Shown here in pieces: positions 18,980-30,479 of a stretch of DNA of 64,000 nt. Source of the DNA: Vitrella brassicaformis CCMP3155 (Eukaryota; Protista; Chromerida); the NCBI GenBank assembly GCA_001179505.1, contig CDMY01000308.1:1-64000 (forward strand), written 5' to 3'. Numbering within the stretch: position 1 is the stretch's first letter; every line of letters begins with the position of its first letter. Position numbers and translations under genes: made by a program. Under the pieces are notes generated by a model. The model saw only the letters and a list, made by a program, of their open reading frames with translations, was not told the DNA's origin and made no database searches.

Positions 18980-19365
18980 GGTGGAGTGGAAGGCGACGGC
19001 GACAAGAAAGCTGTTGGCGCAGCGAGTGAGAATGGGGGGCAAGTGGAGGGGAGGGGAGGATGGAGGGGGAGGATGGACGGATGGATCTGTGGTTGGATCT
19101 GGGCGGCTCCGCCGCTGAAGCCTTTTAGCGCTAACGCTAAAGAGTGTACGCGGTGGGAGGTTCGTAAATTAACGCTAAGAGAACGAGGAGAGAGGTTAGT
19201 GGAGAGAGAGGTTAGTGGCCACTCACTGCATGATACGCAAATGCATGCATGGCTGGTGGTGGTGGGTTTTGACGCCGTCCATTAGCAGTAGCTGAAGCAT
19301 GCACACACAGACCCCCCGGTTTGTGAGCCACACACCACAGGCTCACTCATCGGTCGTCTGTGCAG

Positions 19366-19535
19366 CTCTTTGGCTGCCAGCCGTCGCCCGCATCGACACG
19401 TCGGAGCGTCCCGTGGGCGGCGAGGAGGGTGCGGCGAGATTCCCCGAGACAGTGAGGGTGGTGGAGCAGGTGATGGGGGACGACGCACAGGTGGTGTTCG
19501 GCGATGAGTTGGAGCTGTAGACTGACTGATCGGCT
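19366..19535 (+). pseudogene. Orphan 3'-terminal fragment of F-box-like family B
   Basis: Encodes TSERPVGGEEGAARFPETVRVVEQVMGDDAQVVFGDELEL*, closely matching the C-termini at 26.2-26.35 kb and 29.66-29.79 kb. It also shares the downstream GTAGACTGACTGATC with the 29.78-kb copy. Confidence 0.8.
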
Positions 19536-24994: not shown

Positions 24995-26897
24995 TTGCCG
25001 CAGCCACTGGTGAATGAAGGACACACACACACACATACACATAGATCATGTGCCACGCATGACGGCGGCTCTCTCGCTCTCTTGTCGGTTCGGTTCATCC
25101 GTCAGGCAATGCTGGCATCCTTGGGCCACGGCCGCCCCGCCACCCCTCCACGACTGCGACTGCGGTCCCTGGTGATCAGCAAAGCCGCCCACTCGGTGCA
25201 CACCAGACAAGCACTCCTCACACAGATTAACAACGGCCCGAACCGAGAAGACATCACCAGCGCTGTGCTCCAGAAGGTCAAGGAGCATATCGACGCCCAG
25301 TTCGTCGCCAAGGGCCTCAAAGGGATCATCGCCCTCTCCCCTGATCTGACGTCCATCGACCTGCTGCTGCAGCTGGCGTACTTCATCGACCACAGCGGCG
25401 AGTGGGCGGCGACGGTGCCCATCATCAGGGTGGCCAAGCATCAGCGGCAGGTGGAACAGTTGCCGATAGAGCTTAGCAGTGCTGATGTGGAGGGGGTGGG
25501 CAGCCGGGCACTCTTCGACAACCAGTGTGAGGCGCTGCGCCAGCTCTCACTCATCCAGCGCCACCTCGGCGTGACGCTCGAGCGCCACAACAATGGCGTG
25601 GAGCTGTTGAACGGAGAGCCGCTGACGATCCGCACACTGCAGACGCTGCCGGCCGACAGCCCCTTCCGCGATGGATTCGACCCGAACAACCCCGTGTGTG
25701 AGTATGACGGTGAGGGAGGGAGGGGAGGGAGGCGCGGGAGGGGGATGAGGGATCATCATTTGGTTGCGTATATGTGTGTGTGCAGATTGGGAGTTTGCTT
25801 CAGTCCGCGATGCCGTGTGGTTGGATAAGTAACAAAAGGAGGAGAATGCACACACATCGCCACGTTGGCTGCACCGCTCTGCCATGGTGTGTCTGATCAG
25901 GATGCAGTATGGAGGGCGGCGGGTCGTGGAGCAGTATGCGCCCCGGCACATTAATCCCCCACGGTGCGACCGACTCGTCAGTCATCCCCCTGCGCACACC
26001 CGATTGCCTCACCAGCTGTCCCACTCACTCCTTGTCATCTCCTTTTCTCTTCAGCGGATCCTCGCCACTCAGCCGCCGCCCCTATGGGACCGCCACATCA
26101 TCAGCACCAAGCACATTGCAGCAGGAGGAGCCTTCGGACGCATGATAGTGCTGCATGGCGACCAGCGGGGGGACGCCTTCGAGGCCCACCTCTACATCCA
26201 CAGCTTTGCCAGCATTGCCAGCGCCCACCTCTACACGACGGAGCGTCCCGTGGCGGGCGAGAAGGGTGCCGCGAGGTTTCCGCTGACAGTGAGGGTGGTG
26301 CGGCAGGTGATGGGGGCTGACGCAGAGAGGGTGTTCGGCAACAAGCTGGCCATAGCTCTCCCCCCTGCTGCTGCTGGTGGCGGTCAGGGAGCCGGGCAGA
26401 CCGCAGGCAAGCGCAAGCAGGGGCGACGGCACACACACAAGCAATGAATCCAATTGGATGTGTGGCTGTGTGTAGGTCCTGCTGCTGCTGCTGCTGCGAC
26501 CGCCTCGTCATCGGCTGCTGCAGGTGAGGCGATAGCCTCCCCTTCGCAACAGAATGGTACACACACACGCCAGCCAGACGCACACGGACATCACAATGGT
26601 CGTTGAGTCCTCTGTCCGTCACTGTGTGGTGTGCTGCGTGCAGCTGACTTGGTTGGGGCCCCTTCGGTCAACGTTGGCGTGGCGTCACCCCATGTGGCCG
26701 CCCCAGCAGCTGGTGGTGATGGCAGTTGTGGTGGCAATCGTGGCGAGAAGCGCAAGGCGGTCGCACTATCGGCATCAATTGGCGACAATGGCGAAGAGGG
26801 CGATACGGCGGCCGACGGTGGACGGGCGCAGAGGCGACGTCGCGAGCAGACGGCCAGGGGCGCAGAGGACAGCAGCATGACGATGGGGGACGAGTAG
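24995..26897 (+). CDS. Lineage-specific protein (family B, paralogue 1)
   Basis: Exons encode AKGLKGIIALSPDL...LLLQLAYFIDHSGEW...RQLSLIQRHLG...NPVCEY|DWEFASVRD...VLHGDQRGDAFEAH...YTTERPVAGEKGAARFPLTVRVVRQVMG, colinear with 28530-29792. Probable low-complexity tail exons run to 26897. Start uncertain. Confidence 0.7.
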
Positions 26898-27425
26898 CCG
26901 ACATCAGATACTGACCGACTTACTGTGAATAGGGGAGGGAGGGAGGGAGGGAGGGGCTGACTGACTCATGGTGGCTGGCTGGCTGGTTGGATGGATGGAT
27001 GGATGGATGAGTAGACAGACAGCTGACAGGACAAGCAGAGGGGAGGCAGGGAGGGGACGGCCTGTGGTGCTGGACCCACGGGGCCCACTTGGTGCTGCAT
27101 GATGTGTATGGTATGGACGGATGTCGTATGCGTGGCGCTCGACGTGTCTGTGAGATGCAAAGGATGATCCGCAGTGCTGCCCGCCTCACCATTCTCACAT
27201 GTAAACCACAAAGGCCATTGATTCAATCCTCTTCTTCCCCTGCTCTGCGAGCTTGTGAGCGAGCCCACGTCAAATGGCAAATAGCGTCGCTGTAGATCTT
27301 CTTTGGCGCTCACTGCTTCACTGTGAGTGCTGTGCGACCATGAGAAGCCTCCACTGAGGGGCCGCGTACTGACATCCAAGTCGGTGAGCATGATGGAGAA
27401 GGATGGCTAGAGGGATGGCATTGTG

Positions 27426-29753
27426 ATGGCACTGTGCGCCTCTGCACTCTTGTCTGCAGGCGTGTTTGGCCGGCGCGGCGCCATGGCAGCTGCAGCGTCA
27501 CCATCATCCGCTGCCGACCTCCCGCAGCCACAGGTACGGTACGTGTACCTCAGTCGCCCATTCATTTGTTTGATTTGTTTGTCCGTTTCATCCATCCATC
27601 CATCAGGTGGTGCCGTCGTCCCGCGACCGCTGCCAGACCGGCACTCGTGTGTGGATGGTGACGGACGGGCGCGAGAAGGGCAGGCAGGAATGGGTCAAGG
27701 CCGACGTCTATCGCACTGAGGAGTCCATCAAGGGGCTGAGAGTGTCTGTGAGGGAGGTGGGCGGCCGGAATGAGGAGTTCACTGTGATGGTGCCGCACCA
27801 GACCAGAGCATCAAATGCAGTAAGTAGAACCGCATCCACCGCACCCACAGATCCACTGATTGAATGATCCCGTGTGTGATATGCTTGATGTGCCTGCAGG
27901 TGCACAAGGGCTTCAGGCTCGTTGAGAAGGCGCCTCTGGAGCAGCCTGTAGGAAAGCATGATGGCAGCACCACGGTAAGTCCTCAAGCAGCCACGGACAC
28001 ACGGATAAATCGTCTCCCTTGGTTGCCTTTGTTCCAGGAGGTCGTGTTCGAGTGTCACTGTGAGCGGACCAGGCCGGGCGACGAGCTGTCCGTCGTCGGT
28101 GTCGTCGACGAGCTCGGCAAATGGGACGTCACCAAGGCCCTGCCGCTGGACGGCAGCGCCTACCCCATCTGGCGCAGCGCACTTGTCTGTCTGCCCGCCC
28201 CTGTGCATAGCGTCGAGTTTAAGTTTGTGCTGCGGCTGGGCGATGGAGGGTGGGAGTGGGAGCGCTTCAGAGGTGAGCGACATGAGAGTCTGTCACGGGG
28301 ATCAGGGTGAATGGATGGATGGATCTCCTGGTGTGGATGCGTGTGTGTGCGTGTGTGTGCGTGTGTGTGTGTGATGAACAGGCAATCGTGAGGCGACTCT
28401 TCTCTCCAGTGATGGCCGCGTCACATTTGTCAAGTGTGCATTCGGTGAGAACAAAACGCACACAGACATAATGGCGACGACAACACGGGGATGCGTCGAT
28501 GTGTGTGGGCATGTTCCTTCTTTTGTCAGACGACAAGGGTCAACAGTCCGTGCTTGACATTGACCAGCCTCGACTGTTCCAGCTGCCTCAGGAGGTCGAG
28601 CTGGAACTGTACCAGCTCCTCGGCAACGACCTGGCCATCGGCCTTGCCCGCTTCCGTCGCACATGCCGCATGGGCAACCTGCGTGTGTCAGATCCCGCGT
28701 CTGGTGCCTACCTGAGGACACAAATCAACCAGCAGCTCGCCGCCAAGGGCCTCGAGGGCATCATCGCCCTCTCTCCTGACCTGACGTCCATCGCCCTGCT
28801 GCTGCAGCTGTCGTACTTCATCGACCACAGCGGCGAGTGGGCGGGGTGGGAGCCGATCATCCGAGTGGCGGTGCATCAGCGGCGGGGAGAGGGGCGGTTG
28901 CCGATAGAGCTGACCAGTGCTGACGTGGAGGGGGTCGGCAGCCGGCCGGTCTACGACAGCCGGTGCGAGGCGATGCGGCAGCTCTCACTCATCCAGCGCC
29001 ACCTCGGCATGACGCTGGAGCGCATCAATGACGAGGAGCGGCTGAATGGGTATCGGCTGACCATCCACAGACTGCAGACGCTGCCGCCCAACAGCCCCTT
29101 CCGTGATGATAGATTCGACGAGGCCAACCCCGTGTGTGAGATGCCAGCAAGTGAGGGAGGGGGGAGAAGCGGGAAAGAGCTGCGGGAAAGAGCACGTGTG
29201 TGTCTGTATGTGTGCAGTTCACTACTACGCTTCAGTTCGCGACCTTGTATTGTATGAGTACAAAGACAAACAGAAAACGCTCACACGCATACACAGTGGC
29301 TGAACTGCTCTGCCGTGATGTGTCTGTCTGGTCAGGATGCAGCTGGGAGCGTCAGAGGTCGCGTACGAGATTCCGAACGCGTACCTCCGACTGGTCAGTC
29401 AGCCGAACGCACCCACACAAGAGCCTCACAGGCTGCCGCACTCAGTCATTGTCATCTCTCTCTCGCTTCAGCGGCAGCTCGCCAGGCAGCAGCCCCCGGC
29501 GTGGAACTGCCGCACCATTAGCACCAGCCACAGGAGCGACGGGCCGGCAGCAGGAAACATCGGCCGCGTGATAGTGCTGCATGGCGACCAGCGTGGGCAC
29601 ACCTTCGAAGCCCACATCTTCATCGGCAGCTACGCCACTCTTGCCAGCGCCCACCTCTACACGACAGAGCGCCCGGTGGCCGGCAGGGTGGGTGCCGCCA
29701 GGTTCCCCCAGACAGTGAGGGTGGTGCGGCAGGTGATGGGGGCCGACGCATAG
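27426..29753 (+). CDS. Chimeric protein: N-terminal SH3/Tudor-like segment + CBM20 + F-box-like motif + family B domain
   Basis: Consecutive GT-AG introns (27534-27606, 27820-27899, 27975-28037, 28273-28381, 28445-28529) keep one frame. They join CBM20 (EVVFECHCERTRPGDELSVVGVVDELGKWD...YPIW...VEFKFV...WERFR|GNR) to F|DDKGQQSVLDIDQPRLFQLPQEVELELYQLLG...TCR and the family B domain. TAG at 29751 truncates 13 conserved codons. Confidence 0.75.
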
Positions 29754-30479
29754 GTGGTGTTCGGCAACAAGCTAGCCGTAGCCGTAGACTGACTGATCCG
29801 TTCATCTGTCTACTCTCGGCTGCACATGTACCTTGTCTGCCTGCCTCTTAAGTGGCCACGGCAGCAGATGGCAGGCCGGGATGGCCGAGAGGCTGACAGA
29901 TATGTTGATGGACGGACGGACGGACGGATGGATGGATGGATGCATCTTTGGTGTGGCTGTCTTTGTGATGAATTCTTTCTCGCCGCACACACATTCACCG
30001 ACAGCCATCTCAGAAGTGTCTCAGCACCATCCCGCAGTCTCACTGACTCACGTGACACCACATAAATAAGGTCCCAGTGCTCACACCTAGACCAGTATGC
30101 TCACACCTTCTCGAAACACTCCCACACAAAAGAGCTGAGGCCCTCGGCTGCACAAAGCCTCACTGACGACACCACACACATCTTCAGCAAACACGCACTC
30201 CATCCATTTCCTTGTCCCCTTCTCCCACTAAGTCGCTTTCTCGTCGGGACGTCAGTCGAGGGAAGACGCAAGAGGGCGAGGGATAAAGGCCGAGACAGAC
30301 AGACCGACAGACAGACAGGCAGGCAGGCAGACAGACAGACGGCAGAACGAAGCCGTCGAGACAAACAGACGAGCACAGAGCAGCACCAGTCGATTGTGGA
30401 GGCACGAAACGCGGACACGCTGTACGTACAACCTGCCAACCTCTCACTCACCCATTCACTGCCTCACTGACAGTACTCG

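What the first reader, a model, noticed from the sequence alone, without database searches (positions are those of the whole stretch)
27426..29792. Spliced in-frame fusion of a starch-binding CBM20 to an F-box-like adaptor
Seen: five consecutive canonical introns keep the frame from the N-terminus through a complete CBM20 into LFQLPQEVELELYQLLGNDLAIGLARFRRTCR and the family B domain. The paralogue at 25 kb has no visible CBM20. A segment GTRVWMVTD...EWVKADV resembling an SH3/Tudor-like fold precedes the CBM20. Established: the F-box consensus is L..LP.E....I...L......L..V.K/R.W, and the laforin (CBM20)-malin complex links glycogen to ubiquitination in animals. Inference: a single-polypeptide route for bringing an SCF ligase to amylopectin granules. 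I know of no description of this architecture.
Basis: partly seen in the sequence, partly recalled or inferred. Interest (0 to 1): 0.72.

Follow-up and report, generated by a model that had tools for sequence, protein, structure and literature searches.

The report
Starch-binding module in F-box-like gene
The alga Vitrella brassicaformis really makes one spliced mRNA that joins a starch-binding module to a member of an alga-only gene family carrying a worn F-box-like motif, but whether it brings a ubiquitin ligase to starch is unproven.

Summary
A public transcript contig (L001) matches the window exon for exon.

Corrections:
The start is 27483.
- Three more introns follow downstream.

The CBM20 is solid: Pfam E 1e-13, with the site-1 binding residues kept. 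The gene is already public (CEM01697.1 / A0A0G4ESS3, auto-named "CBM20 domain-containing protein").

It belongs to a family found only in Vitrella: 49 cluster representatives among 1.84 billion. Its closest paralogues have the same N-terminal beta domain, linker, F-box-like motif and C-terminal "B" domain, but no CBM20. The CBM20 is therefore a two-exon insertion. An environmental orthologue (L002, 89% nucleotide identity) keeps the architecture.

The F-box reading is only partly supported:
- This protein hits no F-box profile.
- 6 of 36 family segments give sub-threshold Pfam F-box hits.
- UniProt names three paralogues F-box proteins.
- AlphaFold models do not show an F-box fold.

Earlier notes of this scan report the same architecture on other DNA of this genome.

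The parts
27276..27383 (+). 5'UTR exon of the transcript
   Evidence: L001 nt 1-108 match at 100%
27384..27459 (+).
   Evidence: absent from L001 (boundary read)
27460..27533 (+). exon with the start codon ATG 27483 (MAAAAS..., Ala/Ser-rich, no hydrophobic signal peptide)
   Evidence: paralogues start the same way
27607..27819 (+). exon for the N-terminal beta domain (GTRVWMVTD...EWVKADV...), possibly a chromo-barrel/Tudor-like barrel
   Evidence: shared with paralogues; modelled as 4-5 strands, pLDDT 68-82; weak matches to Tip60, RBBP1 and SAWADEE barrels, Z 4.2-4.5
27900..27974 (+). linker exon (VHKGFRLVEKAP...)
28038..28272 (+). CBM20 exon 1
   Evidence: Pfam PF00686 E 1.3e-13; aligned to A. 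niger glucoamylase SBD 1AC0
28382..28444 (+). CBM20 exon 2 (last strands)
   Evidence: Pfam match on P0002 runs 113-202 across this junction
28445..28529 (+). the intron whose removal fuses the CBM20 to the F-box-like exon
   Evidence: absent from L001, GT-AG
28530..29150 (+). large exon: F-box-like motif followed by the first two thirds of the family-B domain
28574..28669 (+). F-box-like motif LFQLPQEV...RFRRTCR (residues 228-259 of the 545-aa product)
   Evidence: no Pfam hit for this copy; hhalign to the motif of UniProt-named F-box paralogues, probability 96.6%
29218..29257 (+). B-domain exon
29336..29393 (+). B-domain exon
29472..29753 (+). last coding exon, ending at TAG 29751-29753
   Evidence: orthologue L002 has CAG at this codon
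29754..29792 (+). cut-off relic of the family's usual C-terminal tail, still in frame after the TAG
   Evidence: tails of paralogues
29793..29942 (+). rest of the 3'UTR covered by the transcript contig
   Evidence: L001 nt 1435-1906 match 29471-29942 at 100%
25169..26447 (+). neighbouring paralogue with the B domain only (no beta domain, no CBM20, no F-box-like motif)
   Evidence: same subtype as P0003-P0006

Best explanation
This is one real, transcribed, ten-exon gene of Vitrella brassicaformis (public protein CEM01697.1 / A0A0G4ESS3). The transcript-supported product has 545 residues. In order it carries a short Ala/Ser-rich start without a signal peptide, a small beta-barrel domain, a linker, a CBM20 starch-binding domain, a degenerate F-box-like helical motif, and a roughly 270-residue alpha/beta 'B' domain. 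The B domain defines a gene family seen only in Vitrella. The closest paralogues have the same layout without the CBM20, so the CBM20 arrived as a two-exon insertion between the linker exon and the F-box-like exon. Shown: the splicing, the CBM20 identity, the family membership, and conservation of the architecture in an environmental orthologue. Inferred: the CBM20 keeps its glucan-binding residues and most likely tethers the protein to the alga's cytosolic starch (about 0.7). The LFxLPxEV motif descends from an F-box (about 0.65). If it still docks on Skp1 (about 0.35), the protein would be a starch-anchored SCF substrate receptor, with the B domain as the family's common binding or effector module.
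For: - Transcript: L001 is colinear with the window and lacks all nine introns. Its products P0002 and P0070, and the public model P0069, agree with the exons.
- CBM20: Pfam 51-53 bits against a cut-off of 23.3. The alignment to glucoamylase SBD 1AC0 keeps the equivalents of W543, K578, W590, E591, N595, Y556 and W563 (residue roles from the CBM20 literature).
- Family: an exhaustive phmmer search gave 49 hits at E<=1e-3 in 1.84 billion representatives. Every hit that carries an organism name is V. brassicaformis.
- Insertion: P0015, P0016, P0059-P0062 and P0020 run from beta domain and linker straight into the motif.
- Orthologue: L002 (ENA metagenome) is colinear at 88.6% nucleotide identity, with open frames and splice sites conserved at nearly every exon boundary. 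dN/dS is 0.34 for the CBM20 and 0.38 for the motif part.
- F-box: 6 of 36 motif segments hit Pfam F-box-like (best E 2.6e-4) and 3 hit F-box. P0014 matches positions 2-44 of the 47-position model. The orthologue's segment scores E 0.031. UniProt names P0014, P0058 and P0068 F-box proteins. hhalign of the close subfamily's motif against that of the named members gives 96.6%, E 6e-10. Feature and structure neighbours of residues 256-315 of P0069 are F-box families.
- Cell biology: Vitrella starch is cytosolic (preprint 10.64898/2026.09.25.754361), and Vitrella has the Skp1 pathway genes (PMC11570480).
Against: - This protein's own motif hits no F-box model even at E<=10. No family member reaches Pfam's cut-off.
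- Family profiles find no F-box chain in the PDB.
- AlphaFold2 draws the motif as one long helix plus a hairpin, at pLDDT 60-78. No F-box appears among structural matches.
- The canonical Trp of the F-box is missing.
- The layout is inverted relative to classical F-box proteins: the variable module is N-terminal and the constant domain C-terminal.
- dN/dS of the beta domain and the B domain against L002 is high (0.6-0.9, on small counts).
- This genome's copy carries a nonsense codon 13 codons early. This could mean relaxed constraint.
- Only one assembled transcript contig was available, and it has a 52-nt gap that shifts the frame. Read-level RNA evidence could not be obtained.
Confidence: 0.6

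Rival explanations
1. The motif is a relic, or was never an F-box. The protein does not bind Skp1 and works outside the ubiquitin system. On this view the CBM20 simply places the family-B domain, of unknown activity or binding, on starch.
For: There is no profile hit for this copy and no PDB F-box hit from family profiles. The AlphaFold2 models are not F-box-shaped. The B domain is modelled with high confidence (pLDDT above 90) and is the conserved part of the family. A whole subfamily, including the 25-kb neighbour, has replaced the motif with another sequence and kept B.
Against: F-box and F-box-like are the only recurrent Pfam signal in the family. Three paralogues carry UniProt F-box names. 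ESM neighbours are F-box families. The motif part has dN/dS 0.38 against the orthologue.
Confidence: 0.35
2. The fusion is a recent, nearly neutral exon-shuffling product in a fast-turnover multigene family that is partly decaying, with no dedicated role at starch.
For: The copy carries a premature TAG. dN/dS is 0.6-0.9 in the beta and B domains. Uneven dS suggests gene conversion. Broken family pieces lie nearby, for example at 19299-19520. The word search found no close copy of this CBM20.
Against: The gene is transcribed and correctly spliced. The architecture is kept, with open frames, in a lineage about 11% diverged in DNA. The CBM20 has the lowest dN/dS (0.34) and keeps its binding residues. 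The 298-nt cassette cannot be skipped in frame.
Confidence: 0.15
3. Two separate genes: a CBM20 protein ending near 28558 and a family-B protein starting downstream.
For: Gene callers on genomic contigs split the locus into ORFs (L002). L001 was also called as two genes, but only because of its 52-nt gap.
Against: L001 removes 28445-28529 exactly and reads through the junction. The public model P0069 does the same.
Confidence: 0.02

Closest known systems
Laforin-malin system of animals (CBM20 phosphatase plus RING-NHL E3)
   Same: A CBM20 brings a ubiquitin-system component to an alpha-glucan store.
   Different: It uses two polypeptides. The ligase is a RING protein, not an SCF adaptor. Laforin is a phosphatase. 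Here there is one chain with a CBM20 and an unproven F-box-like motif. (From general knowledge; not tested here.)
Glycan-binding F-box proteins: FBXO2/Fbs1 (F-box + FBA sugar-binding domain) and plant F-box-Nictaba (PMC5050601)
   Same: A carbohydrate-binding module and an F-box sit in one polypeptide.
   Different: In those proteins the lectin domain is C-terminal and is itself the substrate-recognition domain, for glycans on glycoproteins. Here the CBM20 is N-terminal to the motif, targets a storage polysaccharide, and a separate C-terminal B domain is present.
Lineage-specific expanded F-box families (C. elegans F-box-FTH/FBA2, plant F-box families)
   Same: A large, fast-evolving, clustered family restricted to one lineage, with the motif N-terminal to a lineage-specific domain.
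   Different: In Vitrella the motif is below profile thresholds in every member, and some members carry extra N-terminal modules (CBM20 here; HMG-box, SAP and BTB in annotated models).
Toxoplasma gondii F-box proteins found through the Skp1 interactome (PMC11570480)
   Same: They are alveolate F-box proteins. The authors stress how hard F-box proteins are to detect from sequence alone, and Vitrella has the Skp1 pathway genes.
   Different: None of those proteins is reported with a starch-binding domain: the paper does not contain 'starch', 'amylopectin' or 'CBM'. Homology of the Vitrella family to them was not tested.
Other CBM20/ubiquitin-system fusions noted by this scan in the same genome (CBM20 + F-box-like at other loci; CBM20-DUB; CBM20-like-RING)
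   Same: They share the theme of a starch-binding module joined to a ubiquitin-pathway module in Vitrella.
   Different: They lie at different loci and have different partners. I did not re-examine them. The word search found no close copy of this gene's CBM20.

Membership tests
CBM20 (Pfam PF00686) | Profile match above the curated cut-off | tested here: met
   50.9-52.6 bits against a cut-off of 23.3; E 1e-13 to 4e-14; covers positions 2-91 of the 97-position model.
CBM20 (Pfam PF00686) | Binding-site 1 residues (A. niger glucoamylase W543, K578, W590, E591, N595) | tested here: met
   All are aligned to identical residues in the phmmer alignment to 1AC0. Residue roles come from the literature, not from a tool.
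CBM20 (Pfam PF00686) | Binding-site 2 aromatics (Y527, Y556, W563) | tested here: inconclusive
   The equivalents of Y556 and W563 are kept; Y527 aligns to Pro.
CBM20 (Pfam PF00686) | Binding to starch or amylopectin | not testable with these tools
   Needs a pull-down with the recombinant domain.
F-box (Pfam PF00646 / PF12937) | Profile match for this protein | tested here: not met
   No hit at E<=10 for exon 7, P0002, P0069 or the excised motif.
F-box (Pfam PF00646 / PF12937) | Profile match in homologous segments of relatives | tested here: inconclusive
   6 of 36 segments hit F-box-like (best E 2.6e-4) and 3 hit F-box (best 1.3e-3); all are below the cut-offs. P0014 scores 19.6 bits over positions 2-44 of 47, and orthologue P0001 E 0.031. 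UniProt names three paralogues F-box. hhalign links the subfamilies at 96.6%.
F-box (Pfam PF00646 / PF12937) | Consensus residues: L-P, acidic residue, spaced hydrophobics, [VT]-[SC]-[KR]-x-W | tested here: inconclusive
   By eye, the L-P, E, the hydrophobic spacing and R-R-T-C-R are present, and a Gly/Asp-rich stretch (GND here; GPDG in some paralogues) sits at the expected H1-H2 loop. The Trp is absent, and a 3-residue insert is present in this subtype.
F-box (Pfam PF00646 / PF12937) | Three-helix F-box fold | tested here: inconclusive
   The AlphaFold2 fragment model has pLDDT 70.8, with one long helix plus two shorter ones. There is no F-box among Foldseek or VIA matches. ESM Atlas neighbours of the same segment are mostly F-box proteins, TM 0.43-0.55 over about 50 residues.
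F-box (Pfam PF00646 / PF12937) | Binding to Skp1 | not testable with these tools
   No multimer prediction or experiment was available.
Vitrella 'family B' (unnamed, no Pfam model) | Homology of the C-terminal domain across its length | tested here: met
   E 1e-39 to 1e-96 to named Vitrella proteins. The last exon is also shared. No Pfam family matches. No structural match above Z 5.4 was found, though the whole 423-residue model was searched, not the domain alone.
Tudor / chromo-barrel (SH3-like 'Royal' domains) | Profile or structural match of the N-terminal beta domain | tested here: inconclusive
   No Pfam hit for this protein's own segment; paralogue P0015's segment gives only DUF4819 at E 0.018. 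No PDB profile hit. Structural matches are Tip60 4qqg Z 4.5, RBBP1 6bph Z 4.2 and SHH1 SAWADEE 4iup Z 4.2, on a model of paralogue P0015.

The most novel reading that the evidence does not exclude
The protein is a genuine SCF substrate receptor anchored on the cytosolic starch granule. That would give an alveolate alga a one-chain route for ubiquitin control of granule-surface proteins. More broadly, the Vitrella family would use interchangeable N-terminal 'address' modules (CBM20, HMG-box, SAP, chromo-barrel-like) to place a common F-box plus B-domain unit at different cell sites.
Probability: 0.25. Interest if true: 0.7.

Novelty: new variant of a known kind. Interest (0 to 1): 0.45.

Why it matters
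How storage-glucan granules are policed by the ubiquitin system is known mainly from the animal laforin-malin pair. Nothing comparable is described for alveolates, which include apicomplexan parasites that store amylopectin. A starch-tethered SCF adaptor would give a directly testable entry point: pull-downs on purified granules, and Skp1 binding. It would also show how a lineage-specific F-box-like family gains new cell addresses by exon insertion. If the motif turns out to be dead, the gene is still a clean, transcript-verified example of domain insertion into a young multigene family, but of local interest only.

Tried and rejected
No read-level splice counts or isoform ratios exist.
- Pfam at E<=10 on the exon, the transcript product, the public protein and the excised motif gave no F-box.
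- Family motif profiles against PDB sequences gave only chance hits, a ribosomal protein and a dioxygenase.
- A profile of the beta domain against the PDB gave nothing.
- The AlphaFold2 model of paralogue P0015 gave no Foldseek match at E<=0.001 in the PDB, a best VIA Z of 5.4, and ESM Atlas TM <=0.31.
- The AlphaFold2 model of this gene's motif fragment gave no F-box among matches.
- The word search with the CBM20 region found no relative other than the gene itself.
- The metagenome scan with the CBM20 found nothing.
- The idea that the 52-nt gap in L001 is a real intron was rejected. No GT-AG placement is possible, it breaks the frame, and both the orthologue and the public model keep the segment.
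- The two-gene reading was rejected.
- I did not build or search a joined spliced model of my own. Searches used single exons by reference or the database proteins P0002, P0069 and P0070.
Full report
**What is there.** The window is nuclear DNA of the chromerid alga Vitrella brassicaformis. Most relatives of the gene that carry a name are labelled V. brassicaformis CCMP3155. Earlier notes of this scan say the same.

**Transcript evidence.** The region 27276-29942 (+) is one gene. A word search with the large exon returned P0002, a 320-residue protein with a precomputed CBM20 hit. P0002 comes from a 1906-nt JGI contig, L001. BLAST of L001 on the window gives ten colinear blocks at about 99-100% identity. 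The nine gaps between them are GT-AG introns of 63-109 nt (the first boundary was corrected by one base from the sequence). L001 is therefore a spliced transcript.

P0002 reads straight from the N-terminus through the CBM20 into the LFQLPQEV segment.

**Corrections to the model.**
- The ATG at 27426 lies inside a 5'UTR intron (27384-27459). The first ATG of the mRNA is 27483, giving MAAAAS as in the paralogues.
- Downstream of 29150 there are three more introns and three more exons.
- The CDS ends at an in-frame TAG (29751-29753). From ATG 27483 it is 1638 nt with the stop, or 545 residues.
- L001 lacks 52 nt (28839-28890) at a junction that cannot be written as GT-AG and lies between GGGCGG repeats. 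The gap breaks the frame, which is why two genes were called on L001. The genome, the public protein and an orthologue are all open there. I take the gap as an assembly or RT artefact.

**Public status.** The 90% cluster of P0002 also holds P0069, which is CEM01697.1 / UniRef100_A0A0G4ESS3. It has 580 residues and UniProt names it "CBM20 domain-containing protein". It is identical to the transcript-based product except for 35 extra N-terminal residues, taken from an exon at 27155 that L001 does not support. The gene model, including the fusion, has therefore been public for some time, but only with an automatic CBM20 label.

I found no paper that discusses it. Six papers hold both "CBM20" and "F-box", none of them about such a fusion. 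The one paper with "Vitrella" and "CBM20" is a 2026 preprint on starch pathways, and it mentions neither F-box nor ubiquitin.

**The CBM20.** Pfam PF00686 scores 51-53 bits against a cut-off of 23.3. The closest solved structures are the starch-binding domains of maltotetraohydrolase, glucoamylase and CGTases. In the alignment to A. niger glucoamylase SBD (1AC0):
- the equivalents of the site-1 residues W543, K578, W590, E591 and N595 are identical;
- the site-2 residues Y556 and W563 are identical;
- Y527 is Pro (residue roles from the CBM20 literature).

Glucan binding is therefore likely but untested. The protein has no hydrophobic N-terminal signal. The preprint describes Vitrella starch as cytosolic and packed around the pyrenoid, so a cytosolic CBM20 protein could reach it.

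**The family.** An exhaustive phmmer search with the large exon found only 49 proteins at E<=1e-3 among 1.84 billion cluster representatives. All those looked up are Vitrella proteins or unnamed assemblies. There are three family pieces in the window: this gene, a B-only paralogue at about 25.2-26.4 kb, and an orphan last-exon piece at 19299-19520.

The closest paralogues (P0015, P0016, P0059-P0062, P0020) share three things with this gene:
- the MAAAAS start;
- the beta-domain exon and the linker exon;
- the motif followed by the B domain.

In them the linker runs directly into the LFxLPxEV motif. The CBM20 of this gene is therefore a two-exon insertion (28038-28272 and 28382-28444). Its 298 nt are not a multiple of three, so it cannot be skipped in frame. 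No close copy of this CBM20 turned up in the word search or in the metagenome scan. Other family members carry other extra modules in their annotated models: HMG-box, SAP, BTB, TLDc and ubiquitin. Some of those models may be fused genes; P0013 clearly holds two family units.

**An orthologue.** P0001 comes from an ENA metagenome contig, L002 (2870 nt). L002 is colinear with window 27270-30000 at 88.6% nucleotide identity. Every exon frame is open in L002, splice sites are kept at nearly every exon boundary, and the CBM20 exons have no indels.

Exon-by-exon dN/dS, all on small counts:

| Region | dN/dS |
|---|---|
| CBM20 | 0.34 |
| Motif part of exon 7 | 0.38 |
| Linker | 0.47 |
| B part of exon 7 | 0.64 |
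| Exons 8-10 (rest of B) | 0.83 |
| Beta domain | 0.92 |

dS is uneven along the gene (0.06 to 0.23), which suggests gene conversion among paralogues. L002 has CAG where the window has TAG at 29751, and it keeps the usual 13-residue tail. The truncation is thus specific to this genome's copy. The transcript carries the TAG too.

**Is the motif an F-box?**

Evidence against:
- No Pfam F-box or F-box-like hit for this protein at E<=10, whether whole or excised.
- Family motif profiles find no F-box chain among PDB sequences.
- AlphaFold2 models the region with low to middling confidence, as one long helix through the expected H1-loop-H2, in paralogue P0015 (pLDDT 60-73) and in this gene's fragment (pLDDT 70.8).
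- Neither Foldseek nor VIA-align lists an F-box.
- The consensus Trp is missing.

Evidence for:
- By eye the L-P, the acidic residue, the spaced hydrophobics, a Gly/Asp-rich stretch (GND here, GPDG in some paralogues) at the loop position and an R-x-T-C-[RK] stretch line up with the consensus.
- 6 of 36 family segments hit F-box-like (best E 2.6e-4) and 3 hit F-box. These are the only recurrent Pfam families.
- The close paralogue P0014 matches model positions 2-44 of 47 at 19.6 bits, and the orthologue's segment scores E 0.031.
- UniProt names P0014, P0058 and P0068 "F-box domain-containing protein".
- hhalign joins the close subfamily's motif to that of the named distant members at 96.6%. 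In the full alignment, both sit at the same distance from the B domain.
- The ESM Atlas feature neighbours of residues 256-315 of P0069 are all F-box clusters (scores 0.75-0.80, leads only). Most structure neighbours of the Atlas's own low-confidence model are F-box proteins.

The Toxoplasma Skp1-interactome paper stresses that F-box proteins are hard to detect from sequence alone, and notes that Vitrella has the Skp1 pathway genes.

My reading: descent from an F-box is more likely than not (about 0.65). Present-day Skp1 binding is open (about 0.35).

**The other domains.**
- N-terminal segment: it is modelled in paralogue P0015 as a small beta-barrel (pLDDT 68-82). It has weak matches to chromo-barrel/Tudor-type domains: Tip60 Z 4.5, RBBP1 Z 4.2, SAWADEE Z 4.2. 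There is no profile support.
- B domain: it is modelled with pLDDT above 90 but has no Pfam family and no convincing structural match (best Z 5.4; Foldseek E>0.1; Atlas TM <=0.31). This was tested only on the whole 423-residue model, so I do not claim a new fold.

**How it most likely works.**
- Shown: one mRNA, one reading frame, a bona fide CBM20 inside a family protein, and the architecture kept in a diverged relative.
- Inferred: the CBM20 tethers the protein to cytosolic starch; the motif may dock on Skp1; the B domain is the constant module that binds the family's common partner or does its common job.
- Difference from classical F-box proteins: there the variable domain is C-terminal. 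Here the variable "address" is N-terminal and the C-terminal domain is constant.

Rivals, in order of weight:
- a motif that no longer binds Skp1, or never did (0.35);
- a nearly neutral shuffling product in a decaying family (0.15);
- two separate genes (0.02).

**Novelty and score.** Carbohydrate-binding F-box proteins (Fbs1/FBXO2; F-box-Nictaba, PMC5050601) and the CBM20-plus-E3 pairing of laforin and malin are known kinds. A CBM20 in one chain with an F-box-like motif is a new variant, if the motif holds. This scan has already reported the same architecture at other loci of this genome (s1-205674, s1-221736, s1-205730), so it is a further member and not a first sighting. Interest is 0.45.

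Noticed in passing
window 29751-29792: An in-frame TAG cuts the last 13 codons of the family's usual C-terminus. The tail is still intact in frame behind it. The environmental orthologue L002 has CAG at that codon, and the transcript carries the TAG. This is either a recent nonsense change or a tolerated truncation.
   Followed up: partly
window 19299-19520 (+): An orphan piece resembling only the last exon of a family-B gene (about 55% amino-acid and 81% nucleotide identity to this gene's last exon), with no upstream family exons detected. It is probably a relic.
   Followed up: partly
window 27155-27383: The public model CEM01697.1 starts at ATG 27155 and adds 35 residues through an upstream exon. 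Transcript L001 is continuous over 27276-27383 and does not support that splice, so the annotated N-terminus is probably wrong.
   Followed up: partly
L001 nt about 1078 / window 28839-28890: The transcript contig lacks 52 nt between GGGCGG direct repeats at a non-GT-AG junction, which shifts the frame. It is likely an assembly or template-switch artefact.
   Followed up: yes
window 27607-29750 versus L002: Synonymous divergence from the environmental orthologue is uneven: about 0.22 in the beta-domain and motif parts, and 0.06 in the B part of the large exon. L002's beta-domain exon looks more like other paralogues. Gene conversion within the family is likely.
   Followed up: partly
family members P0034, P0035, P0044, P0027 (other Vitrella loci): Annotated family members carry HMG-box, BTB or ubiquitin domains next to the motif-plus-B unit. 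This suggests modular heads, although some models may be fused neighbouring genes (P0013 holds two family units).
   Followed up: no
model of P0015, residues about 140-423 (equivalent to window 28690-29750): The family-B domain is predicted with pLDDT above 90 but has no Pfam family and no structural match above Z 5.4. It should be folded and searched alone.
   Followed up: partly
window 28330-28375 and 27580-27606, 29925-29945: A (TG)n tract lies inside the intron between the two CBM20 exons, and (GGAT)n/(CCAT)n microsatellites lie in introns and the flanks. These are a common feature of this genome, according to another note of the scan.
   Followed up: no
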